Positions 25,530 through 47,250 of a stretch of DNA of 64,000 bases are shown here, piece by piece. The stretch is taken from assembly GCA_965603825.1 (NCBI GenBank), contig CBFDEM010000009.1:372001-436000 (forward strand), read 5' to 3'. The position numbers and the translations under genes were made by a program. Source of the DNA: Blepharisma stoltei ATCC 30299. Its lineage: Eukaryota; Protista; Ciliophora. The notes beneath the pieces are model-generated. The model saw only the letters and a list, made by a program, of their open reading frames with translations, had not been told where the DNA came from and did not search any database. How positions within the stretch are numbered: position 1 is the first letter of the stretch; each line of letters starts with the position of its first letter.

Positions 25530-26540
<1,011 letters not shown>

Positions 26541-26800
26541 ATTTAATATTTTTGAAACTAATTTTTGGCCTTCAGAATAATTTTTGATTTGTTGAAAAAA
26601 CAACTAAGCATATCTTCTTTTAAAACAAAACTTTGCAGTTCTTGCAATGGATTAGTCAATTTAATTAATAAATTTGCGTTCTTATTTCGTCAAAAAGAAA
26701 CAGCTAATTTGATAATATTAAAAGCTTATAAAAATTTCAAAGATTTTTAAATAAATATCTTTTTATTTCGTTTTTTTTTCTATTTAATTCTCACAATCAA

Positions 26801-27274
26801 CCAACTGTAGATAAAAGTCAGAAGAGAGACTACGTGGACGGATAGGAGGAGGTTCTAATTTTTATAATCAGGATTTTGCAGAACGCTGTGCAATTCAGAT
26901 CGTGTGCAAGATGATAGAAGATGAAGAGATTTTTGATACTGGATTTAAAGTCTTTTCTTTATGAAAATTTGGGCTATGAAACGCTCTTAACGCGTTACTT
27001 GGCTTATTGCCGCTGCCCTTCAGTTGAAGAAGCTGATAGGAAGTTCTACGAAGGCATAGTGATCTTTAAAGGTTATCATCCTTGCAAGAAAGTTCATCAG
27101 CTTTATGAGAGACTTGCTCGTCTTAATGCTGAAAGTGAAAAAAGCGACAAAATTGCTTTGCATATGCTTTTTGAATATATTACGGATTACAATCATGCAG
27201 ATTTTCCAAAACTCCATTCTCGATTTCTGGGTGAGAGAAGTGGATAAATAACTGAAAAAGAAGCTTATAATCAA
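26801..27274 (+). pseudogene. 474-bp insertion carrying a gene fragment (one frame 26801-27247 with two internal TAG)
   Basis: Absent from duplicate copy 2; flanked by AATCAA at 26795-26800 and 27269-27274; higher GC than its flanks. Confidence 0.65.
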
Positions 27275-27351
27275 TAAATTTATTCCACATATACATTGGG
27301 GGTCTCTTAAAAATTCATTATCTTTTTGTTAAATACATCAAGTTTCGCTTG

Positions 27352-27545
27352 ATGCTCATTAATAATTTTATACTTGAGAATTGGAGCGAAATTGCAAGCT
27401 ATAGCAATGAGAATTATTCAGAAAATTTTATATCTACTGCACTTGAAGGGCTTGCTAGTGTAAACCCAAAAACTCAGTATTTTGGAAGATATCTCCAAGT
27501 ATTTTATGGATTTCATGAAACTTTTCATCATAATTTTTTTTGAAA
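27352..27545 (+). pseudogene. Duplicated 3' fragment of the DUF3050/globin-like gene
   Basis: [25 protein letters not shown] is identical to the upstream gene; no 5' part; indels present. Confidence 0.8.
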
Positions 27546-27856
27546 CTAATTTTTGGCCTTTACAATAATTTTTGATTTTAAAACATAATAAGCATATCTT
27601 CTTTTATAAAACAAAACTTTGCAGTTCTTCCAATGGCTAAGCCAATTTAATGTATTTCGTTAATTCATTTAAATTCTTATTTTGTCAAAAAGAAACAGCT
27701 AATTGCCATAATATTAATAGCTTATAAAAATTTAAAAGATTTTCGAATAAATATCTTTTTGATTCGATTTTTTACTATTTAAATTTATAATCAATAGATT
27801 TATTCCACATATGCATTGGGGTTCTCTTAAAAATTCATTAGCTTTTTGTTAAATAT

Positions 27857-30800
27857 ATGAAGTCTTTTCCTAAGGAGAATTTGATCATAAAACTTTCGAA
27901 CAAAGTTGAGTTGTTCAAGGGAAACTCAGAACCGTCTCACTTTTTCTCACCTGAGCAAGCATCAAGTAAAATAAACCCAAATACAAGCACTCCATGTATT
28001 TGTGGCTGCAACTCTCCAATGCTTATGAACAAGAGAAACTCTAATGTAATACCATCGACCCCTAAAGAAAATTTTCTAGCCCTTTTAAAAGGTTTCCTTG
28101 AAGAATCCAGAATGCCAAAGTATAATTTAAAAGTAATTCCAGATTCCAATTATGACATATATGACCTTTTTCATTGTATATTGAAAGTAAGAAAGCACTT
28201 CGGAAGGATCAGTTGGAAGGCAGTTGGAAAAGTACTTGATGCTCAAAATTCAGGTCGGGAACTCAGAAGATCTCTAAGAGCTTTTTATAAGGATTATTTA
28301 GCAGCCTTTGAGAAATGGATTTATGAAAAGGGACCTGTTACAGTCGGCTGCATAGGAACTCAAATAGTTGTGACGATCTTAAAGGACTTCTTACCAGGCT
28401 GCTCCTCAGCTAGAAAAGAAGCTATATCTCCTAAGGAAACCGAGAGTGCACTAACTTGCGACACCAGCCACGAAGAGGCTAACGATATCCTCCCTCCAGA
28501 GATAGTTGATTTATTAGAAGATTTGATTAAAAAAGTGGAAGAAATAAAGGAAAAAGAAGAAAATGAAGACAAAACCAAAGCAAATGCCGTCATTGAAGAA
28601 GAAATAGCCATAGAAGAAGTTAAAATTGAAGAAAAACCACAAAAAAGACCACATGAAGAGGAGGAAAGTCAAAAATGTGAAGAAGATGTAGTATTTAAGC
28701 AGATGAAAATTGAAGACCATGATAGTCTCCCTGATATTGATGCACCTATTTCATCACCAATTTTTATAATAAAAAAAATTGAAGTGAGTCCTGAAAAAGT
28801 AAATAAAAATATTGCAAAAAAGCATAAAATAGAAGAAAATTTTGAAGAAAAAACTGATGAAAAAGCAGAACAGGTAAAAGAAGAGACAAAAGAAGAAAAA
28901 AAAGATATCGCAAAACCTAAAAAAGCAAAGAATATCGAAATAGTTAAAGAAGAAAAGCCAGAAAGCACTCCTACATCTCCCAAAAAAGAAAGCCCAAAGA
29001 AACAAAAAGCTAAAAAACATGAAGAAATCCCAGTGTGTAACCCCATGACATCCGAATTTCGCACCATCAACCCTGCCGACATCGGTTACCGCACAAACTT
29101 CATAAGTCGCTACCTTCCTATTGAAATGCAAGAAAACCACAAGCGTCAAGAAGAACTCCTTGACCAAGACAAAGAACCAAAACAAGTCAAAGCTGAAAGG
29201 GAATCCAAAGCTCATTTCATCAGAAAAAAGCAATCAGCCGTCAACATCAAAAGATGCTGTGGAGTAACTTACGTTAAACCCACAGAAAGCAAGCAAGAAG
29301 GGGTTTCCGAAGAATTTCCACCTTTGCCTCCTCTTGCTTTTCAAGTAGGCACCGTCGACAGACTTGTCCCCAATGAAGAGCGTCCTGAATATTTTGCATT
29401 AGCCCGAGAATTAATAAAAAATTTATTTGAGAACCAAGGAGTTGTCAGGGTGACGGTGCAGCAGTATTATACTGAAACTGATTTAAAAAGATATGTATTA
29501 GGAGAAATGAAGGATGGAGATGAAGTTTTTGTTGGGGATATGAGAATGATGTGGAGAATGCTCGGAAAAGACAATTTTGTGACGATTCATTTGCAGATGG
29601 ATGAGAAATCACTGCTAGCTCCAGCTTTGCCTGGACAAAGAGGAGATGTGCTGTTAGGATTTTTGGTGAAAAAAGGACTGTGTGGGATGAGATCTGTAAA
29701 AAGATGCTTGGGGCTTGACGAACTAGATACTGACCCACTAAATATATACGCAAGCCAAATAAGACTGGAATTATACCTACAGAAAAAGGCTTGGAAAATG
29801 GCGACTATAAAAACAAGAAAACTTCTATGTTCATTTATATATGAATTTGAAGCTTATATTCAGCGTTTTCTACTAGACTGAAACGCAGCTCGTGAAAAAA
29901 TTTATAAAAATAAAAGCATAGAGCCGATGACAGGGATTTATTCATGGAGCAAGTCTTGCAATTGCGTTTTACCCCAAACCCACGTCACCCCCACATCTAA
30001 TTGGACCTATTCCACAGCCCAGCCTCACTCAATTCTTCATAACTGTCCTGTCTGCAAATCTAACTGTACTACAGTTCTAAGTTTATATGAAAAAGGTCTT
30101 ACTGAAATGATGGACTCAAAAAATCCTCCCAATTGGTTCTATTTAATAAACACCCGCGACTCTTTTTCTTATGATCTCCACGTCAAAAAAACCATTTTAG
30201 AATGAAATGGCAAAAAAATCCTTAAGCGGGAATATTTTTTCAGAAAAAACGATTTGCCTTCAAATTATTATGATTGGGAAAAATGGCTTGAAGGAGACTT
30301 TGTAAGGGTTGGCGCAGTAAGCTACCAAGGGGCATTTACCCAGGAAGAGCTTCTAAAGCTAGAAGAAAGAGCAAGAGAGACTGAAAATGACTTCAGAAAA
30401 GGCCATTTTTTACAGAATACAGCTCAGCCTTCTTATGGAGCTGGCGGGTCTATTAAAAGAACTAAATTTTTCTTCGGAACTCGCTATATGTGGACTGCTC
30501 TTCAGCTCGCCGAAAGACAATCTCGAGTGGCAGCAGGAGTTAGGGTAGACGTAAGCGACACTCCATATTGAATGAGAAAAGAAATTCTCGAACCTTTAGA
30601 AGATTCAGGGATAATTGAAAAAGGCTTCATTAACTCAATTGCTATGAATATTTATCATGATGGAAAAGAAGGCTTAGCGCAGCATTTTGATGATGCTGTC
30701 AGGTTTAAACAGCCAATTTATACAGTAAAACTAGGAAGTGACGCAAGATTGTCATTTGGAAGCCAGTTTTATGGGTATTTAAATGGAGCTTTCTGTATAC

Positions 30801-31105
30801 CTTGCCCAAGGGGCGCTGTATGTGTGATGGAGGAATTTTCATATGCGGCGAATTCAGCGAAACATTGTGTGAGGCCTTGCGATATGAGTGGAAGGTCGAT
30901 TACGCTAATATTGAGACAGATACACCCGTTTATTATGGAGGAGGCGAGAAGATATGATGTTGAAATTGATTTGCCGACGTGGATTTCGACACTCTCACTG
31001 GAGGATAATGCAGTGCCGTATTATAAGCAGAAAGAGATGGAAGCGAGAAGACTTATGCATGAAGATAGTGAAGCTGGAAAAAAGCCAGCGACAGGAGGAT
31101 ATTAG
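27857..31105 (+). CDS. ARID-domain plus ALKBH5-like 2OG-Fe(II) dioxygenase protein, 1082 aa
   Basis: Four track ORFs in one frame joined by three TGA. ARID pattern FLxxLxxF...DIYDLF...WKAVG...LRAFYKDYLAAFE. ALKBH5-like RTKFFFG, PY[W]M, GFINS, HFDD, KHCVRP, RSITLILR. Confidence 0.88.
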
Positions 31106-31478
31106 AGATAAATTATTTAAAGCACTTTTGATTATTTGAATTTTTTGAGTTTATTCTTTATTATAAGAGGATTAAAAGGCTATTTAAATATAAAAATTTC
31201 TTTAATAGCATTGATTATTGGTTTATAATAAAGTTTTCTCTGGTTTCCCTGATTTCTATGAAATGAATATTAATAGATTTATTGATAACATTTAATTAAT
31301 CTAGAATCATATTATTTTCAACATTTTTCTATTGACACTCTTTATTTTATCCAAATCTATGAATTATCTATTTCTCACTATTTACCCTTCAGCTTTCTTA
31401 CCTTAATTCCTTTAAAAACTTAACGCAAATCCTCTTTTCTACTCTTTTCCAATTTAATTTTCAATCAATTCGAGGAGA

Positions 31479-33824
31479 ATGAATAAAATGGACAAATCTA
31501 TATCAATTAGTACCCCTTTAGTTCCTCCTCCGCCACCCCGCAAACAAGGCTGCATTCGATCAATCTTTCGTCTTCTATGCTGCTGCTGTGTCAAAAATAG
31601 CGTAAAATCTACCTAGTTAAGCATCAGAACTGAAAGGAAAAAATTTTGGGTAAAGATCAGAGACCGTCTTCTAAAGAAAAAACACTTTGATCAAGTCTAT
31701 ATCACTCTTTTAAATTTATATTCACACCAGCACGTTATATCAGACCTAGAAAAATGCCAAGTCAGCCCAGATTTCCGCAAGAAAAAACGTGAAGATTTGG
31801 AATTTTACGTCCCACAGCTCTGGTATATTTTTAATATAGTAATTTATTGCTATTTGGATTTCTAGACCACAATGAAGACTTAATCCGTGCTGTTCTTGAG
31901 TTCTGCAAAACTTCTTTTCATTTTTCCCACAGAGTTTACTGATTTTTGAAATCTACCGATTTCAGTTTATTAGATTTGCCTGGAATTGACCCTGACCAGT
32001 AATAATTTATTCAGCTTAATTGAAAGCGTTGAAAAGGTCTCTCAGGAATCACACCCAATTTACCTTGGAAAAGGCACAGAATTGTTCCAACTTATGGTGA
32101 GTATGGGGATGGAGTTCAATTTAAACAGCTCAAAAAAGAGCTTTTCTGACATTTTGGAAGAGGAGCCTGAAGATATTGCGATTTTGAGGGATTTAATTCA
32201 TGAATACAACTTGACTGGGAAGGTGGAAAGTGATATTCCGGATAAGATAAACCCAAAGTATATTCCTTTGAACCCATTTCCTAAAGGAAACATAGTTGAT
32301 GGCTATCATTCTACCCTATGGTTCGTCGAAAAACTTACTCAAATTTCTATAAGAATACTGCACAGTCCTAAAAAGTCAGAAACTCTTAAAGAAGAGCTCA
32401 AAGAACTAAACCAACTCTTACCTGCATGTGCTTATATTCCCTTTAATAATCCTATAGCTAGAAATTGTGCTGTGTTACATATAATTGCTAATGAAGCTAG
32501 AGTTTTCACGACCAAAGAAAGAGCTCCCTATAAGATTTGTGTAGAGATTTTCAGGCCTTATGAAGAACTATTAGTATTAGATCCATCCAAAAGTGCGTCT
32601 GCACTAGATAGAAGATCAGCTTCAGTGCCGTCTGTAAGATCTTTTCATCTAAATAAAACAGTTATAGAAGAAATCAAATCTGAAACTACAGATGACGGCT
32701 TTGATGAAATAATTAAAGCAATTCAAAAAGAGTCAGAAACTAATAGAAAACATAGAGAAACAATCGATGTCGCTCGTTCAAGGCCTCCTGCGCTATCATC
32801 TTCTTATATTCATTACGACAGATTAAGCATATTTGGTCAGCCTGGAAACGGAGATTTAGAAGCTGTATACGGAGGTGAAGAAGAAGATGACCAAACAGAC
32901 AAAGAAGAGTCTATAGACGAAACCAATAAAAGAGCTATTTTTAAAGAAAGCTTCAAAGAAATGGCCGAAAGAATCAGGTCCAAATCGCCTTTTGGCAAGC
33001 TGAAGACATGAGATTTATTACACATTATAGTAAAAAGTGGCGACGACCTTAGACAAGAGCAGCTAGCAATGCAGCTCATCTCCTTTTTCCAACAAACCTG
33101 AAGGGAAAAAAAGCTTGATTTGTGGCTTTATGCTTACGATATTATTGCAACTGGAGAAGGCTGTGGGATCTTAGAATGCGTCCCAGACGCCATCTCTATA
33201 GATGGGCTTAAAAAAGACCTCCCAACTGACCAAAAGACCCTTCATCATTTTTTCCAAATGCAGTTCGGCGGTGAAAAAAGCAAGCGCTCTAAAAGGGCCA
33301 AACGAGAATTCATGAAAAGCCTCGCTGGGTATAGCCTTTTATGTTATATTTTACAAATAAAAGATAGGCATAATGGGAATATTCTGATTGACAGACATGG
33401 ACATTTAATTCACATAGATTTCGGCTTCATGTTTAGCAACTCCCCAGGAGGGAACATTAATTTTGAAAAAGCCCCATTTAAGCTGACTGATGAGTTTGAA
33501 AGGGTGTTAGGAGGCAGAAGGTCTAAGCTGTTTATAGAATTTAGGTCACTTTGTGTGAAAGGGTTTATTGCACTTAAAGAAAAGGCTGAACAGATTGTGT
33601 TGTTGGTAGAAATGATGAGGTTTGGGAGTGGAGCAAGCTTAGGGTGCTTTGTGGGAGGAGAAGAAGTGACAAGAGGGCTGAGAGAAAGACTGCTGCCTAG
33701 AGAGTCGATGTCAGAAGGAGATTGTAAGGAATATATCAATTTGCTGATAGATGAGAGCTTGGATAACTGGACTACAAGATGCTATGATAGGTTTCAGTAT
33801 TGTTGTCAAAATATCTTTTATTAA
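31479..33824 (+). CDS. PI4KB: Phosphatidylinositol 4-kinase type III beta-like; introns 31602-31616, 31823-31839, 31999-32014
   Basis: FYVPQLC, TKERAPY, VKSGDDLRQE, SLAGYSLLCYILQIKDRHNGN, HIDFG, FEKAPFKLT. Confidence 0.92.
31602..31616 (+). other. 15-nt intron
   Basis: GTAAAATCTACCTAG, A at -6, in-frame TAG. Confidence 0.8.
31823..31839 (+). other. 17-nt intron
   Basis: GTATATTTTTAATATAG; removal gives FYVPQLCNLL. Confidence 0.8.
31999..32014 (+). other. 16-nt intron
   Basis: GTAATAATTTATTCAG; together with the 17-nt intron (33 nt total) it restores the frame into the kinase ORF. Confidence 0.8.
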
Positions 33825-35348
33825 TTAATTGCTTTCTAGAGTATGCTCTTGAAGTTCTTCAGAATTAAGGTCTGATTGAGGAGCATTTTGGCTAGCTTCT
33901 GGCTGAGGGTTTTCTAGAGGATTTTGTTGAATAAGACTATCCTGTTGAGCGTTATTTCTTCTTAAATGTATAAAATTGTGTGTGTTCTCGATTTCTTCCC
34001 ACTCAAAGCTCCTTAAAAGATCTCGCAACTTCGCCATCGCTTCTGCTTTAGGCTCAGGCTTCACATTTATCAAATTGCTGCATAATATTTACTTAACAGT
34101 TTCAACCGAAATAGTCGCGTTCCCTCTTATCATTTTATTAATTGCCTCTCCAACAGCTGCTGAAGACGCTCCTCCTATTATAACTCTATCAAAAATATTT
34201 TTAAATCTGCTTTTCCCTGCAATTGTAGTCAAATTTTCCATAATTGGGTAGATTTTTATATCAAATTTCTGAAAAGCAGGCAAAAAGCTTTGGCCTTGGA
34301 AATCTAAGTCAGTTTCAGGGACTGGGTCTTCTTGTTTGATTTCTTCGCCTGCCCAGTATTTTTTATATAAAATTGATTTATCTTTTTCTGGAGGAAAATG
34401 GTAATCTTGAAGAGTTTCCAGCCTTGTGATGATTCTTGTCATGTTAAATTCACTTATATCGATTGAGTTCTATATATAATTTACATGGATTCTATCCTGA
34501 TTTCCGATTTTATTCAAAATTTTGTTGCAGTCTTCACAGCAGAACACATCAGTCCCAAATGCCCAATAAGGACTCATTAAAATATCTCCCCAATAGCCTC
34601 TTACAAGCACACTGTCCCGGGTTTTTTTCTTCTGCCCAGGGATATACCCTGACATTGTCCTATTAGGACTTATATAAGTAGCCAGACGTATGTCATAAGC
34701 CACCCCGCTTTGTCTTCATTCTTTATAGTGTCTAAAAGTAACCTGTGGGGCGTATTTTTTAAACTCCCATTGATAATCCCAGTCAATTAAATTCGCTCGA
34801 TGGTCATATCTGTCTTTATAATGATACCTCAGCCTTTGATCCCTTAGCGATCCCATATCAAAAGGTGCATCTACATGCCAAGCCCTTAAAGTTTCTTCTA
34901 ATTCGTCTCTTTCCTTAAATTTCAAGCAGGAAAAATCGAAAAATTTTTTAATTTCTGACGCATTTCTATGCTGGGTAAGAATTTTTATCAGTTCTTGGGC
35001 TCGTAATGATATATAATTTGCAGTTCTTTCTCTTGTTAAAGCATTAGCATAAATATCGTAAAATAGTTCTACTCTTTCTCGTATAGGGAGCTGGACTTCA
35101 TTGATTAAATATAACAACAAAATATCCCGGGCAAGGACTTCTTTATCAGGCTCTTGGATGTAAAAATTTATTTTTGTGAAGCGGTCATGGGTGCATTCTT
35201 CAGAAAGGCTTAATAAAAGGTGCCGGATATCGCCAGAGCCTGAGATAAGGACGTTAAGTTCTGAAGATTCAGGAGAAAGAGAGAAAAGATTGAGGGCGGG
35301 AGTGAAACCCCAAAAATGGATAAATCCAATACCTTCAGCGATTTCCAT
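33825..35348 (-). CDS. DNAAF3: Dynein axonemal assembly factor 3 (PF22); introns 34470-34484 and 34078-34092
   Basis: GFIHFWGFTPALNL, GDIRHLL, LKFKERD, DQRLRYHYKDRYD, DWDY, E[TGA]RQSGVAY, RGYWGDILMSPY. Confidence 0.92.
34078..34092 (-). other. 15-nt intron
   Basis: GTAAATATTATGCAG, in-frame TAA. Confidence 0.8.
34470..34484 (-). other. 15-nt intron
   Basis: GTAAATTATATATAG, in-frame TAG. Confidence 0.85.
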
Positions 35349-35356
35349 TTTATTAA

Positions 35357-36658
35357 TTACAAAGGCTTTATAGCCCTTCCTATTTGGTTTTCCAAAGCTC
35401 TTAGCAGCTGAACTTCTTGTGAGTTTCTTAAAATTATAACAGAAATGGCATTTTTTACAGGTGAGCTGCAGCATGCTATTCTTTGGTCGTATTCTACTGC
35501 ATCAGGAGTCATCCCATCACTGCTTGGTACCCCAAGCATTATAACAACCCCTACCCCTGCCGGTTGATATTTCCTCAAAAGTGTATTTCCACACATAAGT
35601 ACCCTGATTTCTCCATCCTTAAATGCTTTTAATTTTTCATATATACTCGTTTCCTCATCCCTCATTGAGTTTACAGCATCAATAGCAGTCCCATAGCTAC
35701 TAAAAATTTCTGAAATACTTTTAAATTCTTCTTCACTATTACAAAACACTAACATCCCGCCTGCTAAAGGAAAATGGTCTTCATGGCTGATAATCTTTCG
35801 GATAGTGCCCATAAAATCGAGATTTAGCAGTTCTGTGTAAAATTGGTCAATTGTTTGGATTAGGCTTATAGGGTAGGTGATGTGGATAGGGTTCAAGCCT
35901 TTTAGGTATTGTTTGCAGAAATTTGCTTCGACTTCGTTTGTGAATTTTATTACTGCTTCGTCTGGGTAGTTTTGAGTAAAATAGATTACTGGGATGTTTT
36001 CCAGCTGGTGCTGGAGGATGTGGAGGATCACAGAAACTCCTAAAAAGGCTCTGTTTTGTTTAGAGTTGAGAATTTCTTCAGCATCGTCAATGATAAGCAT
36101 TTTAATTTGTGAGGCTTGTGATTGTGTTTGCAAAAGCGTGCTTAATCTTTTTTTTATCTGTTCTCTATCAAGACAAACAGTCATTATATCTGGCTGTCCA
36201 GCATATATATCAGAGGCTACCTCTATATTTCTACATATAATTTCTATCCAATGTTTAAGCTGCATTGCCCGAAAATGAGAGCTAACAACTCACAGAACTT
36301 TGACAGTTCTTGAAGTCGGATTCCGAGAATTTGCTTGAAGGACTGTGATTACTGATAAAATTGCTAACCCTAAGCTTTTCCCTGATCCTGGATGAGCAGT
36401 TATTGTATAAAGTCTATTCTCTGCAGTCAGTTTTTCAAAAATCTTTTCCTGCACAGCTGTCATGAATGTGGAATTTGTGACAGACTGGACTCCTTCTAAA
36501 ATTGGCTGCAAATATTCAACATCAGATCAAAAAGCCCTACATTTTTCTATATCAGATCAGTCGTCTTGGTTTCTGACTGTTTGTGGATCTTGTAAAATAG
36601 AATCAAACATTTCATTGTTTCTACCGCTTTTTTGAGGAGCTAAAGTAAGATAAGACAT
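35357..36658 (-). CDS. Divergent DEAD-box helicase-like protein (DBP5/eIF4A-like), probably inactive, 433 aa
   Basis: TAVQ, AHPGSGKS, IIDDAEE, LVFCN, AFKDGEIRVL; motif VI reads YDQRIACCS. Confidence 0.8.
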
Positions 36659-36728
36659 TTTAAATAAATTAAATATAAATTTGTATTAAAAATAGCAATC
36701 TCGAAGAATTTTTTATTAAAAATGAAGA

Positions 36729-37799
36729 TTAAGCAATAGGATATGATGGAGTCATATTGATACCACAAACTCCTTTCCCGTCAGATATAGCGATATAGAT
36801 ATAGCCTTGATCTCCCCATCCAGTTCCCCAAGAGTTCTTCACAATTCAGTTTCCTGGATGACTAGTAGTGTCAAATCCTACAATAAGTACAGCATGGTCA
36901 AGATTGGTACCGCAGTCACTTGTAACGATTCCTCCAGTGTAATGCTGCCATAAGGTCTGATCAGCTTGCACAGCTACTGAAACGGGTTTGGTAAGCACTG
37001 CCTGCATAAGAGCCTTTGGATTATTAGCAGGGACAATTGAATAGCTTGAAATTGTGGCAGTGGCTTGGGATTCAAGAGAAGTTTGACATTGTCCGCTTTT
37101 TGCTGAGTAAGGATAGATAGCCTCAGTGGTAAGTCCATATTTCATGGCAAATTTGAAAACATTCGTGACTAGGCCACCATTGCAGCCACTATTGCCATAA
37201 GAAGTTGAGCAGTCAACTAATTCTTGTTCTGAGAGGGATACAAGGGTGTGTCCTGCTAAAAACCAAGTTCCTTCAACTGCACCAGTAGCAGAGAAAGCCC
37301 AGCCTGATCCGCTGCATTGTCCTTGATTTTCGACTGGGGTTACTGCGCCTTTAGTTCTCCAATCAAATATTTGGGAGATAGCTTTGATTGGAGTATCGTC
37401 TTGGATCATTTCTTCATCGCTAGGGACATATTCATATTGATTAGGTGTATAAAGAGCTTTGAATTCATCATGGGTAAGGTCAGCGAACTGGGTTACACCA
37501 AGAATGTAGGTTTTACCAAGAGTGTTGTGGACTCGGGCATATGCAGCGTTATCTCTGAAAATTCTGAAACGAGCATTAAATTCATCAATGCTTTTGTATA
37601 GCTTATTAAATTTGGCAGTGAATTTCAAAAATTCTTGCTCCTCAATCTCATATTGGTTGAGAGCAAATTTATTTGAGTCTTTTGAGTTAATAGCTATACT
37701 GAAAACTACTCATATAGCAGCTAGAAGAATTAAAATTCCAGCAAACACTTTATTTCTGATAATGGGTTTTGGTTTATAACTGAAGTACAGATTTTCTAT
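36729..37799 (-). CDS. Papain-family (C1A) cathepsin L-like copy 1; catalytic Cys replaced by Gly; ATA at the paralogous start position (possible pseudogene)
   Basis: I29 prodomain, [14 protein letters not shown], [TGA]IVKNSWG. N-terminus is [10 protein letters not shown] versus [10 protein letters not shown] in copy 2; in-frame TAA just upstream. Confidence 0.8.
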
Positions 37800-38072
37800 T
37801 GTATTTTATGTCCAATAGTTTTGAATGGGTTTTATTCTTTATAAGAAATGGTAAGCAATAATTTAGCTAGTAAAATGATTTAATAAGAAATAGAAGACAA
37901 TGAGTTTAATTTATTATTAATTAGAGCCCTAAAAATATCTCACAAATTAAATTAATTATTTCACCATCTCTATTTATTTTTAATAAGGCATTTTTGAATA
38001 AAGAAATATAGCAAATAGCAATATTGACATCTTATATATTTTAGCTAAACGCAACAGCTTAAATGATTAAGT

Positions 38073-38120
38073 TTAAGCAATAGAATACGATGGATTCATA
38101 TTGCATCCGCAAACCCCTTT
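38073..38120 (-). pseudogene. Cathepsin C-terminal remnant
   Basis: Translates KGVCGCNMNPSYSIA*, with a 3' flank similar to copy 3. Confidence 0.8.
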
Positions 38121-38633
38121 TTTGAAAATATTTTATAAGGATAAAATTATTTTAGCTACACATTTAGCCTTAAGATCTAATACATAAAGAATTGCTTCAA
38201 TCTTAATTCTAAACCCTAAGAATTTAAGCCAAATCAAGAAATAAATTGCATTTTATATTAACAAACATATTTTTTTGGCAGTCAAAGATCATGCTATTTA
38301 AAATTCTTTACTGAAGAAAGATAAAGCGATTCATTTGAATTAAATGTGAATACTTAATACCAAATAAAGGCATTTAAGAGTAATAATCTTACTTAAATAT
38401 TTTACTTGCTAGCTATTATAGCTATATTATTGTAAAAATAACAGCTTTTATTGAGAAGAAACAGGAAAAACTTTAATATCTGATACTTCAAAAGGATGCA
38501 AAATTTTATTTTATAAATATTAAATGGCTTGCTGCTTTCACAGACTGGTTAATGAGAATGATGTAAAATACAAGCATCATTAAAAGTGATGGCCTTTAAT
38601 AAATTTAAATAAAGTAAGGCTAAGTGATTAAGC

Positions 38634-39692
38634 TTAAACAATAGGGTATGATGCATACATATTGATGCCACATACTCCATTGCCATTAGAAGCAGCGATC
38701 CTAATGTATCCTTGCTCTCCCCAGTTTGTTCCCCAAGAGTTCTTCACAATCCAATATTGTGGCTTGGCAGCCATATCATACCCAACAACGAGGACAGCAT
38801 GATTAACTCCGGTTCCGCAATCACTTGATACAATCCCTGAAACATAGTGTTGCCATGCTGGCTGATCGGCTTGTACAAGAACTGAAACTGGCCTTGCCGC
38901 AACTGCTTGCATAAGGGTACTTGATGAATTAGGAGAAACATATCCGTAATTACTGATTTTGGCTGCAACTTTTGCTTCAAGAGAAGTTTGACATTGTCCT
39001 ACTGATCCTGTATAAGGATAGTTGCTTTCAGTGGTAAGTCCATTATCAATAACGAAGTCAAAAGCGTAGTCCATTACACCGCCATTGCATCCTAAATTGC
39101 CATATGAAGATGAACAGTCAACTAACTCTTGTTCAGAAAGCGATATAAGGGAACGTTTAGCTATAGCCCAAGCTCCTTCAACAGCTCCAGTCGTTGAAAA
39201 GGCCCAACATGAGCCACATTGTCCTTGATCTTTAACTGGAGTGACTGCACGCTGGGTTCTCCAATCATATTTTGAATAGACAACTTCGAGTGGAGAGTCA
39301 TCAGTAGTTGGTCTTTGCTCTCTAGGAGTATATGAGCTAGTATAAAGAGCTTTGAACTCTTCATGGGTGAGGTCAGAGAATTTGGTTTGGCCTAGTATAT
39401 AGCTTTTTCCAAGGGTATTGTGGATTCTTGCATAGGCGATATTATCCCTGAAAATCTTAAAGCGAGCATTGAACTCTTCTACACTTTCGTATACTTTGCT
39501 ATATTTAGCAATGAATCCTTGAAACTCTTGCTCCTCGATTTCATACTGTTGGAGAAGAATATTTTTTGAGTTGCTTGAATTAGCAGACAATGTTGCAACA
39601 ACTCCTAAAATAGCTATAAGAGCTAAAGCTCCAAGAATAACCTTCTTTTTGCTGCTGGTTTCTGGTTTATGACTGAAGTACAGGCTTTCCAT
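38634..39692 (-). CDS. Cathepsin L-like cysteine protease copy 2 (catalytic residues intact)
   Basis: [21 protein letters not shown]; N-terminal TM segment and I29 prodomain. Confidence 0.95.
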
Positions 39693-40460
39693 ATTATTAT
39701 AGCCATAATTTGTCAATGGCTCTTATGCATGTAAAAATGCTTTTAATCTTAGCAAACAAAATTAAATTGATCAAAATTTGACTTATAATAAGGCGAAATG
39801 ACAGATTGCAAAAACAAAGAAAAAGTGCTTATATTTTTATTCATAAACCAGGTTAAATACAGGACAAAATACTTATGTTTTTATATATATTTAGCTAATA
39901 GGTCGAAATCTTGCAACAGTTACAGATTCTAATTCAAAGATTTTAAGCTCAGCTAATTACTATAAAAAATTACTTTAGTCTAGGGATAATTAATTTACTT
40001 ATCCAAAAAGCAAGGCCTTATTTGATTCGTAATTTCAAAAATAAAAATAATCTTAGATTATCCTCATTTTATCATCCATTTATATTGATATATTTAATTA
40101 AAGAATCTTCTTTAAGCTATCAACTTCAAAAATACAACAAAAATCAATATCTTTTAAGATTTAATTTAAATCGAATAGTAATTTAACCTATTAAATAATA
40201 AATTGATGACGAATGCTATTAATGTCTTTTATTTGAATAAATAATTTATGCTTTTTGATTCTTTCAAACTTTATATCTGAATCATAAAGAGCTTATTAGG
40301 GATGGCTACTTAAATTCGCATATCCAAACATAAAAGTAGGACAATCAATTATCAGTTTTATAATCTCTTATTAAAGCTCGGTATGAGTAGAAAATCTAAT
40401 AATATTAAGCTTTAATTTTTTGTAATTTTAGAATCTATGTAGAAGGGAATCTCGAAAGGA

Positions 40461-40557
40461 AATAGCTAAAAGCAAATAGTCTAGGGCTGCTTTAGACTGC
40501 CCTTGGCTGTTAAACTACCATCCAAGTGGTAGAGTCCGCACTCGGGCAATTACAACT
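40461..40557 (+). ncRNA. Candidate structured RNA (H/ACA-like architecture)
   Basis: GC-rich island. Stems AATAGCTAA/TTGGCTGTT and TAGTCTA/TAGACTG with G-U pairs, then AAACTA (ANANNA), a second hairpin and ACA. Confidence 0.3.
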
Positions 40558-40703
40558 AGTATAGCTATATTTTTGTAAAAATAGCTGCTTTTATTATTTT
40601 CTGAAAAGAAACGGGAAAAAATCTTTAATATCTGAGGCTTCAAAAGGATGCAAATTTTATTCTTTACAATCCAATATTGTGGCTTGGCAGACATATCATA
40701 ACC
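40555..40703 (-). pseudogene. Remnant duplicate of cathepsin copy 2 and its 3' flank
   Basis: 40661-40703 encodes [14 protein letters not shown]; 40555-40660 repeats 38415-38512. Confidence 0.8.
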
Positions 40704-40885
40704 AAAAATTGATTGCAGAGACTTGAGATTATTAATCATAGCATTCTGAACTAAATATATAAATTAAAATTAGTTCTGAAGGGCAAGTTCTACTTAGAGT
40801 AAATTCTAAATGCTCATAAATCTATCTTTCTATCTAAAGAAATCGCAATTTTTAATGAAAACGTCATAAGTTTAAATGATTAAGC

Positions 40886-41947
40886 TTAAGCAATAGGATA
40901 TGATGGATTCATATTGATACCGCAAACTCCATCTCCTTTACTAATGGCAATTCTGATGTATCCTTGCTCTCCCCAGGATGGGCCCCAAGAGTTCTTCACA
41001 ATCCAGTATGGTGGAGAGTTAGTGTTATCGTAGCCAACAATAAGTACACCATGGTCAAGGGCGGTTCCGCAATTGCTTGATACAATTCCTCCAACATAGC
41101 TTTGCCATGCAGCTTGATCGGCTTCTACAGCTACAGAAACTGGCTTAGTAGCAACTGCTGCCATAAGGGCATTTGAATTCTTAGCAGCTACAATTGCATA
41201 GCTTGAAATTTTGGCTGCGACATTCTTTTCAAGGGTAGTATTGCATTCTCCATTTTCAGCCTTGTAAGGGTAGTTGCTTTCAGTGGTAAGTCCTTTTTGC
41301 ACAACAAATTTAAAAGCGCTAGTCATCAAACCACCGTCACATCCTTTGTTGCCATAAGAGGTTGAACAGTCCATTAATTCTTGTTCAGAGAGGGACACAA
41401 GGGTGTGGCCAGCTAAGAACCAAGTTCCTTCAACAGCGCCTGTGGTTGAGAAAGACCAGCATGAGCCGCATTGTCCTTGATTTTTGACTGCGGTAACTGC
41501 ACCTTTGGTTCTCCAATCAACGCTTGATGGAGCAGCCATATCTGGGTTATAGTCAGCAACTGGACCGTCTTCATTAGGGACATATGCGTTAGGGGTGTAA
41601 CGAGACTTGAATTCATCGTGGGTGAGGTCAGAGAACTGAGTTATCCCGAGCCAGTAGGTTTTTCCAAGGGTGTTGTGGACTCTGGCGAAGGCAATGTTGT
41701 CTCTGAAAATTTTGAAGCGGGCGTTGAACTCATCAATGCTGTCATAGACCTTGTTGTATTTAGCAATGAATCCGAAAAACTCTTGTTCGTCAATTTCATA
41801 TTGTCTGAGGGCATAGTTTGTTGAGTTGCTTGAATAAAGAGCTACAGTTGCGACGACTCCTACAATAGCTACAAGAGCTAAAGCTCCCAAAACAACCTTT
41901 TTCTTGTTGGAGGTTTCTGGCTTGTCACTGAAGTACACTCTTTCCAT
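40886..41947 (-). CDS. Cathepsin L-like cysteine protease copy 3 (catalytic residues intact)
   Basis: [21 protein letters not shown]. Confidence 0.95.
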   Translation of the reverse strand: MERVYFSDKPETSNKKKVVLGALALVAIVGVVATVALYSSNSTNYALRQYEIDEQEFFGFIAKYNKVYDSIDEFNARFKIFRDNIAFARVHNTLGKTYWLGITQFSDLTHDEFKSRYTPNAYVPNEDGPVADYNPDMAAPSSVDWRTKGAVTAVKNQGQCGSCWSFSTTGAVEGTWFLAGHTLVSLSEQELMDCSTSYGNKGCDGGLMTSAFKFVVQKGLTTESNYPYKAENGECNTTLEKNVAAKISSYAIVAAKNSNALMAAVATKPVSVAVEADQAAWQSYVGGIVSSNCGTALDHGVLIVGYDNTNSPPYWIVKNSWGPSWGEQGYIRIAISKGDGVCGINMNPSYPIA

Positions 41948-42425
41948 TTTATTATAACCAATAACTCCTGCCTAGCTTTTATGCATGACATAAAATGGTC
42001 AACAAGTATTTGGCGAATTTAAGTGACTTAAGCAAGCATTCACAAGATGTTTAATTTTTATATATAATTATAATAAAAAAGACAGTATTTTTTCAAAAAG
42101 CCTTTGATTAGCAAAAGTTGAATTTTTTATAAGTATTTGTATGAAATTCTTTGCTGATATTCAAGATCGGGCAGGCAGGTATAGGCAGGCTTATTGAGTC
42201 TGTATCTAGATGGCAGTTGTTTGATATTTTTGTTCATCGAGAAGGTGATTTAGGATATTGCATCAGCGAGACAAAGTATTCTCGAGAAAAGTGGCTCCTT
42301 CTGTGCTGATTAGAGTTTGTCCATCGAGCCTTTAATGCTGCTCCCTAATCCAACATGTTCTAGCTTTTCTTTCAAGCCTTCAATTTTCCCTTTATTAACA
42401 CATAATTAATACCTATCTGAATAAA

Positions 42426-43490
42426 TTAACGAACAGGATAAGCAGGGTACAAATTAATCCCGCAAACACCTTCTCCAGAGGTAATAGCGATTCTCAAGTA
42501 TCCTGATTCTCCCCAGCTTGGTCCATAGGAGTTCTTAACAATCCAATAAGGAGGATTATTAGTATTATCAAACCCAACAATCAAAACTGAGTGGTCTACA
42601 TCAGTTCCGCAATCTTGGCTAATGATGCCTCCAGTGTACATTCTCCAGGCTGCCTGGTTTGATTGGACAACAACTGTAATTGGCTGCTGAACTACAAGTC
42701 CCATTAAATTGTTAGGTGCATTAGCCTCTGCAGTTTGATAGCTAATAATGTTAGCAACTGGCTGGTTTTGAGCTTTAGTTGTGCACTTGCCTTTGGTTCC
42801 TTTATATGGGTAATTAGTATTGCTGGTAAGTCCATGGGCCATTGCAAACTGGAAAGAGTTAGTTGGCAAGCCACCGTTGCACCCTTCATTTCCAAATCTA
42901 GTTGAGCAGTCCACGATTTCTTGTTCAGAAAGAGCTACAAGGGTGTGGTTTGTGATAAACCAAATTCCTTCTACGGCTCCTGCAGCTGCAAAAGCATATC
43001 CGTCTCCACATTGCAATTGGTTACCTACTGGGGTCACAGCGCCTTTTGCTCTCCAGTCCCAGCTTGTGACATTGGTGGCGTTTTTAAGGTTTCCTGACAG
43101 GTTTTTCCTTTCAGGGAGCTGGTACTTGTAAGGAGCGTAAATGCTGGAGAATTCTTCTTGGGTCATGTCAATGAATTGGGTGATTCCTAAACGATAGGAA
43201 CGGCCAAGGGTGTTGTGGACTCTGGCATAGGCATAATTGTCCCTGAAAATTTTAAGGCGTGCCTGGTATTCTTCTTCATTGGCGTAGGCTTTGTTGTACT
43301 TGGCCATAAAGCCCTGGAATTCTTGTTCTTCAATAGCGAATTGCTGAAGGGTGTAATTGGTTGAAGGGGTACTGGAAAGAGTGGCAAAAGCAGCGACGAC
43401 TCCAACAAGGGCGACTACTCCGAGAGCACAAAGCACAATTTTCTTTTTGTTGCTGGGTTCTGGCTTATCGCTGAAGTAAAGCTTGTCCAT
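42426..43490 (-). CDS. Cathepsin L-like copy 4, non-peptidase homologue
   Basis: QLQCGDGYAF (Cys to Gly), VDHSV, KNSYG. Confidence 0.9.
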   Translation of the reverse strand: MDKLYFSDKPEPSNKKKIVLCALGVVALVGVVAAFATLSSTPSTNYTLQQFAIEEQEFQGFMAKYNKAYANEEEYQARLKIFRDNYAYARVHNTLGRSYRLGITQFIDMTQEEFSSIYAPYKYQLPERKNLSGNLKNATNVTSWDWRAKGAVTPVGNQLQCGDGYAFAAAGAVEGIWFITNHTLVALSEQEIVDCSTRFGNEGCNGGLPTNSFQFAMAHGLTSNTNYPYKGTKGKCTTKAQNQPVANIISYQTAEANAPNNLMGLVVQQPITVVVQSNQAAWRMYTGGIISQDCGTDVDHSVLIVGFDNTNNPPYWIVKNSYGPSWGESGYLRIAITSGEGVCGINLYPAYPVR

Positions 43491-44197
43491 TTTAAGTTAA
43501 TTATTTCACCTATGGATGTTAATATGGGGCAGTTTAGATATAAGAGAAGTAGGTGAAATAATGAAATAAGAAAGGCAGATGGAGATAATAAAGGTAAATA
43601 GGGGAATTCTTTGAGGCGAGAAAGGAGGATAATATGGATTTTTTGATTTATTTTGAAAATGAGGAAGAAGAGTTAATGGAAAATTGTGAGGATTTTTAAT
43701 TAAGGCGTTTTATATAAAATAAAAACGTCTGATTAAAAATTTTTATATCTTATAGATAAAATTAATAATATGAATTTTCTATCATATTTTTGGCTTATTT
43801 TTCTCAAAAGTAATTAATTGATATATAAAATTTATAATTTTCGCAAAAAATTACTATACAACAGATAGAAATAGCTCTGAAAATGATATAAGTGAATATG
43901 CTATAAGCTCGCTTATTCCAGAATCTCCCAAAGGAATTGAAGAATTGGTTTTTCAACAAATGCTGTAAAAAATCAAGGAAGAGAAATCTGAATTATTAAA
44001 GGGACGTACCATTATTTAAGTTAGTTTTCTCAGCATTTGTTATAAAGCTAACCATCAAACTTCCTCAGGAGATTTCTTGAACATATCAAGCTAACAATGA
44101 CCTAACACTATAACTGAAATTTATGTGGAGTTAATTTATATTTTAAATTAAATTCTCACAATATTCAACAAATGTTAAGAATCAAGAGAATTTATAT

Positions 44198-45268
44198 TTA
44201 ATAAATAGGATAGGTAGGGACCATATTAATCCCACAAATGCCATCTCCACTTGAAATGGCTATTCTGATGTACCCATTTTCTCCCCAGCTAGGTCCCCAT
44301 GAGTTCTTAACAATCCAATACGGAGGATTATTTGTATTGTCATACCCCACAATAAGCACACTGTTATCAAGATTAACCCCACAGTTACTTGTAATAATCC
44401 CAGTCCTATAGAACTGCCAAGCAGCTTGATTTGATTCTACCACAACTGTAACAGGCCACTGAGCGACGATTGCCATAAGTGAATTAGGTGAATTTGGAGG
44501 GACTGTCTCATAAGAAGTTATTTTGGCAACACCTTGTGCTTGTTTAGACGTATTGCATTTCCCTTTAACACCTTTATAAGGATAGTTAGTCTCACTTGTA
44601 ATCCCATTAGCCATCACAAATTTAAAAGCTTGTGATGCCAAGCCGCCACTGCAGCCATTGGTGCCAAAAGAGCTTGAACAGTCTAGTAATTCTTGTTCTG
44701 ACAATGAAAGCAATTTATTATTGTTAATAAACCAAATTCCTTCAATAGCGCCTGTCGCTGCAAATGCCCACCCACATGCACATTGTAGCTGATTTTTAAC
44801 TGGGGTCACTGCTCCTTTTGTTCTTCAGTCAACTTGTTGAGGAATATCGCCATATGACACTTCTTGTTGCTTAATTTCTTCATTCGTTATTTCATACTTT
44901 ATTGGAGTCATAAATCTTTGAAATTCTTCATGGGTGAGATCAGAAAACTGATTTACACCTAAAAGATAAGAGTTTCCAAGGGAGTTGTGAAATTTTATAT
45001 AAGCAAGATTGGTAAGAAATATGCTGAGGCGGTTTTGATATTCTTCAGGAGTTTTATATGCTTTGTTGTAATGGGAAACAAAATTTAAGAATTCTTGATT
45101 TTCTAGTTCAATTTGTTGGAGTGAATAATAATTCTTATGCAGTGGGATATTATAGAATACTCCAATTATTGAAAGCATGGCTAGCACAAAGATAGCTGCT
45201 GGTGTTCAGAGCCAACTTTTGGTTCTTGAATTAGCTTCTTCTCTGTAGCTAATATAAAAGTTGTCCAT
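44198..45268 (-). CDS. Cathepsin L-like copy 5, non-peptidase homologue
   Basis: ATG 45268; VD[TGA]RTKGAV; QLQCACGWAF (Cys to Gly); LDNSV (His to Asn). Confidence 0.9.
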
Positions 45269-45477
45269 ATAAATGGAAAGTTAAGATATATTGTCTCAAC
45301 TTGAAAATGGAGAATTAATTACTGAAATATTTTAAATTTGCAGTCAATATTACTTATTAATTTTTCACTAGTCATCAAAAAATGCAATTTAGTTAATAAA
45401 AAATATTAATTTATTGTGAAATCATATTTTCTGATGTTGACTTACCACAGTTTCAGCTATCTAATAATCTCAATTAA

Positions 45478-46149
45478 ATGGAAAGAAAATTGAAATATTT
45501 ATGAATCGGAAATCAGCAAACAAGAGAACCACTATTCAAATTTTCATGAAACAATGAATTAGCTGACCAAACTTACCAACAATTTTTAGAAATTCTCAAT
45601 AAAGAATCCTTTTCCAATAATCTTAAAATTATAATTTCAGATTTTGATGAATGATATGGAAAAGTTACAGACAATTTTCTTTTCATAATTTTAACAGATC
45701 AAAATAGTGAATTTGCCTTTATGTGTAAAATATTCGGAAAATTGGAAAGGCTATTCCGCGCTTATCAATATGAATCTGATTTAGACATTTCTAATCAAAA
45801 CTGGATAAGAGACTTGTGAAGGCTGAAGGAGAAATATGAAACTGAAAATAAACCTGAAACCATTGCAGTAATAGATATGAAACTAATAGAAGTTAACTTG
45901 CTCAGAGAAATCAATATTGAAAGACCTTATCTAGATGATTTGAGTGAAAGTCTAGAATACAATTATGATAGAATAAATAGGATTGATGAAGTCTCATTCG
46001 ATACAGAAATTTACATAAATCAAAATCAGAATAGGCTTTGGAAAGAATTAATGCCAATTGCTATTGGAGTCATAGTATTTTTATCTATATTAGGCTTAAT
46101 GCTTGCTGCATCAGCTTCTTTTAAGCCAGAAAGCAGTCATGGATTATAG
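45478..46149 (+). CDS. Tail-anchored protein, possibly longin-domain/SNARE-related, 223 aa
   Basis: ATG 45478 in frame with four TGA=W; alpha/beta N-terminal region; single C-terminal TM. Confidence 0.6.
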
Positions 46150-46182
46150 CTTTATACGATTTCCAAATTAAATTTATTTATT

Positions 46183-47250
46183 TTAATTTAAATAAAGAAT
46201 AGGCATTCTTTCACTATATTCCATTTGAGTTGCCAAAGCTTGCTCTATCATCCCATATGTAATTGGATTTATATCAAAAAGGTACAAAAACAGCACTTGT
46301 CTTCACGAGTAAGGGTGAATTCTATCAGTGGCTGCTATAACTTCTAGTCGATTAATTTTAGGGTCATGGCTTTCTCAGTCTAAATCTCATATATAACATT
46401 TAAGGACTGACCAGTGGCAGATTTCGTTTTTTCTCATGATTTTTTTGTCAAGCTTAAATAGTGTGTAGCCTTCTAGAGTTTGTAAAGATCCGTCAAATTT
46501 AGCTCGGAGCATTACTTCTATATTTCCAGTCCTTATTTGGCAGTCTATTGAGCAGTTGCTGTCTTTTCAGATCAAAACGTCAGGATTGAGGCCGTGCACA
46601 TAAGAACCTGATTTATTGTAAAAGGTTATACCGTCTCTTGGAAAAGGCCACTGAGAAAAATAGACCCAAGATAAGCCTTCGTTGTTTGCAGAGACTCATG
46701 GGAGTCTTTGAAATTGATAATTAGTTCTATTTGTGCTTGTATCAATTTCCTCCAATTTAGTCTTCAAATAAGTCAGTCTATCTTCTGCCTTAATATCACA
46801 GAGATTTTGCCGTTCCCAAAGCTGGATATCTTGAATAAAAATGGTATTCGAGTCTTGGTTAAATATACAGTCAAGTATTATAAAGTCATCATCAAGGTCA
46901 TCAACAGGGAAAAACGACTGAAAATGCATAATTAAGAACCCTGAATACCCGTATAGATACGTTCTACCGTTTTTTGTCACTAATAAACATTTCTCTCCTA
47001 GAGGACGTGGCATTACTAAGAAATTTATGCCATCAATATAATCAAGCGACGTCAAATAGTCTTCCGTCATTATTTGGTTACAATAGAAGACAGAGTTTTC
47101 ATCAGAAAATTCTCCTAAGCCTTGATTTTTCTCCCGAAATTTTTCCCTTTGGTCATTCCTAAGTTTTCTTGCAAAATTGAATCTTCGGTTGCTGTCTTTT
47201 TCATTATAATTTGGATTTGGGATAAAAGCTCGATTAGGTCTAAAACTCAT
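46183..47250 (-). CDS. SNUPN: Snurportin-1 (m3G-cap snRNP import adaptor), 355 aa
   Basis: IBB-like basic N-terminus, YCNQIMTEDYL, PRPLGEKCLLV, ILDCIF, RDGITFYNK...GLNPDVLIWKD; TAA 46183-46185. Confidence 0.85.

What the first reader, a model, noticed from the sequence alone, without database searches (positions are those of the whole stretch)
27857..31105. ARID DNA-binding domain fused to an intact ALKBH5-like dioxygenase: candidate chromatin-targeted N6-methyladenine eraser
Seen: with TGA=Trp, four ORFs form one 1082-aa protein. It has an ARID-like domain (about 28060-28320), a charged linker, an unassigned globular and Cys/His-rich region (CNC...H...HNCPVC..C), and a C-terminal domain (about 30300-30930). 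That domain tracks ALKBH5 block by block (FTQEEL..LE, RTKFFFG.RY, PYW, GFINS..NIY, HFDD, SDARLSFG, PRG, HCVRP.D, RSITLILR), with the HxD..H iron triad and RxxxxxR motif intact. Known: animal ALKBH5 is an m6A RNA demethylase without ARID; ARID binds DNA, often AT-rich; ciliate macronuclei carry abundant ApT 6mA. Inference: this may be a DNA 6mA or nascent-RNA m6A demethylase with built-in chromatin targeting. I do not know this architecture from characterised proteins, and standard-code annotation would hide the fusion.
Basis: partly seen in the sequence, partly recalled or inferred. Interest (0 to 1): 0.88.

Follow-up and report, generated by a model that had tools for sequence, protein, structure and literature searches.

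The report
Ciliate DNA-methyl eraser with ARID domain
This gene is most likely the Blepharisma version of DMT3, a recently described Tetrahymena enzyme that removes methyl marks from adenines in DNA. Unlike the Tetrahymena enzyme it carries its own DNA-binding (ARID) domain, and it shares with its whole family a large folded domain that matches no solved structure.

The parts
27857..31105 (+). Complete CDS, 1082 aa, no introns, code 4 (UGA=Trp); probable orthologue of Tetrahymena DMT3/TtALKBH5
27822..31122 (+). Extent of overlapping RNA-like contigs (approximate transcript, short UTRs); one unitig, 28177-30664, spans the end of the ARID through all three TGAs into the AlkB domain
   Evidence: 4 runs, one study; RNA status is the tool's guess, supported by intergenic gaps and a spliced 17-nt intron in the next gene
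27995..28009 (+). CxCGC motif (C47, C49, C51) just before the ARID; possible metal site (inference)
   Evidence: Cys at all three positions in every homologue that covers them
28064..28321 (+). ARID/BRIGHT domain (aa 70-155), divergent: lacks the usual GG after helix 3, basic H4-L2-H5
28397..29029 (+). Charged low-complexity linker (aa 181-391; 22% E, 19% K), mostly disordered
29030..29188 (+). Conserved NPMT..FR..YLP segment, shared with other ciliates
29198..29926 (+). Core of the clade-wide uncharacterised alpha/beta domain (aa 448-690); not AlkB, not GNAT; no solved structural match
29957..30055 (+). C-x-C...C-x-x-C probable zinc knuckle (C701, C703, C730, C733), detected only in the ARID-bearing clade
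   Evidence: zinc binding inferred
30134..30298 (+). TRDSFSYDL beta-hairpin and GR..K.EYFF segment; the most conserved non-AlkB element in the clade (R767 73/74, D768 71/73)
30302..30922 (+). ALKBH5-type Fe(II)/2OG dioxygenase. R868/K870/Y877 = human R130/K132/Y139; N931/Y933; H943/D945/H1003; K958 at human S219; S969 at C230; C1004 = C267; S1014 at R277; R1020 = R283
   Evidence: dN/dS 0.04
29879..29881 (+). TGA = Trp675 (invariant Trp)
30203..30205 (+). TGA = Trp783 (variable site; TGA also in the paralogue)
30569..30571 (+). TGA = Trp905 (invariant Trp of PxW)

Best explanation
This is the Blepharisma orthologue (one of two paralogues) of DMT3, an Fe(II)/2-oxoglutarate dioxygenase that removes N6-methyladenine from double-stranded ApT sites in macronuclear DNA and opposes the MTA1/AMT1 writer. 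Shown here: one gene; domain order ARID - linker - clade domain - C2C2 knuckle - ALKBH5; intact iron triad and N6-recognition residues; DMT3 signature residues; a writer in the same genome. Inferred from orthology: the methyl-adenine is flipped into the pocket and hydroxylated to 6hmA, formaldehyde is released through the K870/Y877 shuttle, and Ser969 with the shortened flip3 admits dsDNA. Inferred from covariation: K958 replaces the lost Arg277 in holding the 2OG C5 carboxylate. Inferred and untested: the ARID, on a flexible linker, tethers the enzyme to accessible, AT-rich promoter DNA, a job Tetrahymena does without an ARID; the middle domain is a structural or DNA-binding partner of the catalytic domain.
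For: Tree: a ciliate clade (100/96) splits into an ARID-bearing group holding the window protein (100/99) and a group with Tetrahymena, Ichthyophthirius, Paramecium and Furgasonia (98/90). T. malaccensis P0193 has Asn at the first Arg position, as described for DMT3. S969, C1004 and the 4-residue flip3 deletion match the published signature. The middle domain is shared with P0193. An MTA1-like writer is at G000:C23 (2e-86 to 7F4L), and Blepharisma MAC DNA carries 6mA (59.4% hemi; PMC11441545). dN/dS is 0.04 in AlkB and 0.15-0.23 in the ARID. Of 135 rows, 127 have K/R at 958 and no Arg at 1014; the one row with Arg at 1014 has Ser at 958, as human ALKBH5 does. PHD, zf-CW, CXXC, Myb and ARID occur on other clade members.
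Against: No activity data exist for any heterotrich member, and DMT3 itself has no in vitro proof. T. thermophila DMT3 was not retrieved; orthology rests on T. malaccensis P0193 and the published motif description. The tree has no animal or plant ALKBH5 outgroup. DMT3 reaches TSSs without a detectable ARID, and one ARID-clade member (P0013) seems to lack it, so the ARID is dispensable in some lineages. The ARID is divergent and its loop 1 is poorly conserved. Arabidopsis ALKBH9B has the same C230S change yet demethylates RNA. The covariation counts are not phylogenetically independent.
Confidence: 0.78

Rival explanations
1. A DMT3-type 6mA DNA demethylase whose ARID is not the targeting device but a protein-interaction or general-affinity module, with targeting done by the middle domain or by partner proteins.
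For: Tetrahymena and Paramecium orthologues lack the ARID, yet DMT3 is TSS-enriched. The ARID is divergent and less constrained than the middle domain.
Against: The ARID fold is retained under purifying selection with a basic recognition helix across nearly the whole subclade, and DNA or chromatin readers are recruited repeatedly elsewhere in the clade.
Confidence: 0.3
2. An RNA m6A demethylase acting on nascent transcripts, tethered to chromatin by the ARID.
For: The closest solved relative is ALKBH5, and its substrate residues are conserved. Plant ALKBH9B with C230S works on RNA.
Against: DMT3 loss or mutation does not change RNA m6A. The two MT-A70 genes found in the genome look like the DNA writer MTA1 and a ZZ-finger AMT2/5 type (that search gives a lower bound).
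Confidence: 0.1
3. A catalytically weak or inactive scaffold (Arg277 lost), or an alkylation-repair enzyme (1mA/3mC).
For: The canonical 2OG-binding Arg is replaced by Ser1014. No in vitro activity has been shown for the clade.
Against: The triad is invariant and dN/dS is 0.04; a probable compensating Lys is present; Tetrahymena mutants in the same motifs fail to rescue.
Confidence: 0.08

Closest known systems
Tetrahymena DMT3 / TtALKBH5 (Niu et al. 2026, PMC12974511)
   Same: ALKBH5 clade, long unicellular form, HxD...H, NxY, first Arg of Rx5R replaced, C230 to Ser with C267 kept, divergent flip3, co-occurrence with AMT1/MTA1; the middle domain is shared with the T. malaccensis orthologue.
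   Different: N-terminal CxCGC + ARID (none detected in T. malaccensis or Paramecium); Ser rather than Asn at Arg277; a C2C2 knuckle; far more compact (middle domain + AlkB span ~600 aa versus ~1100 aa); only one AlkB domain detected; two paralogues.
Human/zebrafish ALKBH5 (m6A ssRNA demethylase)
   Same: Catalytic domain; R130, K132, Y139, N193, Y195, H204, D206, H266, C267 and R283 equivalents.
   Different: C230 is Ser, R277 is Ser, S219 is Lys, flip3 is 4 residues shorter; about 800 extra N-terminal residues.
ALKBH5-clade fusions with PHD or AT-hook (Iyer, Zhang, Aravind 2016, PMC4738411)
   Same: Chromatin or DNA reader fused to ALKBH5, predicted to demethylate DNA 6mA.
KDM5/JARID1 histone demethylases
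   Different: The catalytic domain is AlkB-type, not JmjC, and acts on a nucleobase; no homology outside the ARID.

Membership tests
ALKBH5 clade | ALKBH5 is the closest characterised relative | tested here: met
   only PDB hits, E 2e-19
ALKBH5 clade | HxD...H iron triad and NxY | tested here: met
   H943/D945/H1003, N931/Y933
ALKBH5 clade | R130/K132/Y139 N6-methyl recognition and proton shuttle | tested here: met
   R868/K870/Y877
Animal ALKBH5 (RNA type) | Canonical Rx5R (R277...R283) | tested here: not met
   S1014...R1020
Animal ALKBH5 (RNA type) | C230-C267 disulfide pair | tested here: not met
   S969 / C1004
DMT3 subclade | C230 to Ser, C267 kept, divergent flip3 | tested here: met
DMT3 subclade | First Arg of the 2OG motif replaced | tested here: met
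   Ser here, Asn in Tetrahymena
DMT3 subclade | Groups with the Tetrahymena orthologue | tested here: met
   ciliate clade 100/96; T. malaccensis used as proxy, no animal outgroup
DMT3 subclade | Long protein; AMT1/MTA1 pathway in the same genome | tested here: met
   1082 aa; MTA1-like E 2e-86
DMT3 subclade | Two AlkB-like domains (most members, per the paper; not universal) | tested here: not met
   one AlkB hit per protein, P0193 included; the middle domain has no AlkB match by hhalign (0.8%) or by fold
DMT3 subclade | Macronuclear, TSS-enriched, removes ApT 6mA in vivo | not testable with these tools
   needs knockdown, SMRT sequencing and ChIP
ARID domain | Profile match above the curated cut-off | tested here: met
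   26 vs 24.1 bits; the paralogue is 20.1 in hmmscan and above cut-off
ARID domain | Helical ARID fold | tested here: met
   nine of the top ten VIA rows are ARID-containing chains
ARID domain | DNA binding or AT preference | not testable with these tools
   basic H5 conserved, L1 divergent; KDM5A's ARID binds CCGCCC (reference title in PMC9077328), so an AT preference cannot be assumed
GNAT acetyltransferase (middle domain) | GNAT fold | tested here: not met

The most novel reading that the evidence does not exclude
DNA-6mA erasers of protists and algae are defined by a previously unnamed ~370-aa domain of new fold that works with the ALKBH5 core to engage double-stranded or nucleosomal DNA, while lineages attach interchangeable targeting readers (ARID in this ciliate subclade; PHD, CW, CXXC, Myb or ARID elsewhere). 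The compact Blepharisma-type protein would give the first in vitro-active eukaryotic ApT-6mA demethylase and show that its ARID selects promoters.
Probability: 0.3. Interest if true: 0.75.

Novelty: new variant of a known kind. Interest (0 to 1): 0.52.

Why it matters
Two questions remain open for the only genetically supported ciliate 6mA eraser. Its activity has not been shown in vitro, because full-length and truncated DMT3 could not be purified (stated in PMC12974511), and the paper's text names no mechanism for how it finds transcription start sites. This orthologue bears on both. Its conserved core is a compact ~600 aa, which suggests construct boundaries (start near aa 445, not at the AlkB domain), and it carries a separable DNA-binding domain whose role can be tested by deletion. 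The clade-wide middle domain is a good structure target. The basic function, however, is already published for the orthologue.

Full report
Organism and code. The assembly has 41,464,486 bases in 64 contigs, and the nearest named protein is from Blepharisma stoltei. This matches the published 41 Mbp, 64-sequence macronuclear genome that reads UGA as Trp (PMC9942806). Code 4 gives long gene-like ORFs across the window.

The gene. 27857-31105 is one 1082-aa frame with TGA at aa 675, 783 and 905. Four public runs from one study give overlapping contigs from 27822 to about 31122; a 2488-nt unitig (28177-30664) crosses all three TGAs with no gaps or changes. The tool only guesses these runs are RNA, but the contigs skip intergenic DNA and lack a 17-nt intron in the next gene. 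A paralogue on contig C41 (= P0002, 1052 aa, 71% identical) has the same layout. Against it dS is about 1.5, and dN/dS is 0.04 in AlkB, 0.06 in the hairpin, 0.10 in the middle domain and 0.15-0.23 in the ARID; eight Trp sites are TGG in one copy and TGA in the other. About 20 full-length homologues of 860-1100 aa share the layout.

Catalytic domain. ALKBH5 is the only solved relative found by sequence. Human R130, K132 and Y139, needed for m6A binding and formaldehyde release (PMC9023255), align to R868, K870 and Y877. N931/Y933, H943/D945/H1003 and R1020 are intact. Across 135 clade rows, 127 have Lys or Arg at the position of human Ser219 (K958 here) and Ser, Asn or Thr at Arg277; the single row with Arg restored has Ser at 958. 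I infer a compensating swap between neighbouring strands. The rows are related and I had no coordinates, so this is not proven.

What it is. PMC12974511 identifies Tetrahymena DMT3 (TtALKBH5) as a macronuclear 6mA demethylase. [quoted passage not shown] The window protein has S969, C1004, a 4-residue flip3 deletion and the Arg replaced. T. malaccensis P0193 has the Asn and serves as my DMT3 proxy; T. thermophila DMT3 itself was not retrieved. A maximum-likelihood tree of the catalytic domain (54 rows; long branches and near-duplicates left out; no animal outgroup) gives a ciliate clade at 100/96. It splits into the ARID-bearing group (100/99) and a Tetrahymena-Ichthyophthirius-Paramecium-Furgasonia group (98/90), which resembles the deepest ciliate split (own knowledge). 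Most ARID-group rows are unnamed metagenome proteins, so calling them heterotrichs is an inference from compact, intron-poor contigs and kinship with Blepharisma. The genome encodes an MTA1-like writer (2e-86 to 7F4L) and a ZZ-finger MT-A70, and Blepharisma MAC DNA carries 6mA (PMC11441545).

Distribution of the ARID. It is present in every member of the subclade with a complete N-terminus except P0013. It is absent from the Tetrahymena, Ichthyophthirius, Paramecium and Furgasonia proteins, and from six frames of the T. malaccensis locus. A canonical ARID (1e-15) with two PHD fingers occurs in P0204, which nests among green-algal proteins, and a weak one (6e-5) in P0199; other members carry PHD, zf-CW, CXXC, Myb or SAM domains. 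Whether the ARIDs share one origin or were gained separately is unresolved. Literature searches found no ARID-ALKBH5 fusion; PHD and AT-hook fusions were noted in PMC4738411. I could not see either paper's figures or supplements.

Mechanism. Most likely a macronuclear dsDNA 6mA demethylase that keeps promoters free of marks laid by MTA1 (0.78, by orthology). The ARID on its flexible linker probably adds promoter or accessible-DNA binding (about even odds); intergenic DNA here is 22-27% GC against 35-42% over most of the coding sequence, so even a mild AT bias would favour promoters. The middle domain is probably a needed partner of the catalytic domain (inference from clade-wide co-conservation), which might explain why truncated DMT3 failed in vitro.

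Limits. The window protein was searched in pieces between TGAs, and folds were made on the paralogue.

Verdict. Real and correctly read in outline; the function is largely anticipated by DMT3. The ARID variant, the unnamed clade domain and the Lys-for-Arg swap appear undescribed. New variant of a known kind, interest 0.52.

Noticed in passing
window 26340-27863: Imperfect tandem duplication with about 1 kb spacing (3' end of the DUF3050 gene and downstream DNA), plus a 79-nt, 92%-identical copy of this gene's 5' UTR and start region at 27265-27343; broken ORF fragments lie between, with weak RNA-like contigs.
   Followed up: partly
window 31485-33828 and G000:C41 ~434760-437100: The downstream PI3/PI4-kinase-family gene also has a 79.6%-identical copy near the paralogue on C41, in the same order: a two-gene duplicated block.
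   Followed up: partly
window 31823-31839: 17-nt GT-AG intron spliced out in contigs of two runs, slightly longer than the usual 15-16 nt.
   Followed up: partly
window 34470-47250: Array of about seven ~360-aa ORFs on the minus strand; five share a ~180-nt stretch that also matches C41. Family not identified.
   Followed up: no
window 25530-26540: ORF matching Pfam DUF3050 (2e-7); from my own knowledge a mostly bacterial family, so its origin may be worth checking.
   Followed up: no
G000:C25:364800-366126: The only other ARID gene found in the genome: a canonical ARID followed by a helical region, probably an ARID1/ARID2-type SWI/SNF subunit.
   Followed up: partly
G000:C23:258009-258506 and C43:365955-366494: MTA1/AMT1-like and ZZ-finger AMT2/5-like MT-A70 writers.
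   Followed up: partly
G000:C53:718327, C37:485526, C53:349678: Other AlkB genes: by inspection two ALKBH8-like (one with a methyltransferase domain) and one ALKBH6-like.
   Followed up: no
P0204 (metagenome contig, green-algal clade): ARID + clade domain + ALKBH5 + two PHD fingers, a KDM5-like reader set on a DNA demethylase.
   Followed up: partly
P0207, P0209 (Coccomyxa): The ALKBH5-clade protein appears joined to starch synthase domains; probably merged gene models.
   Followed up: no
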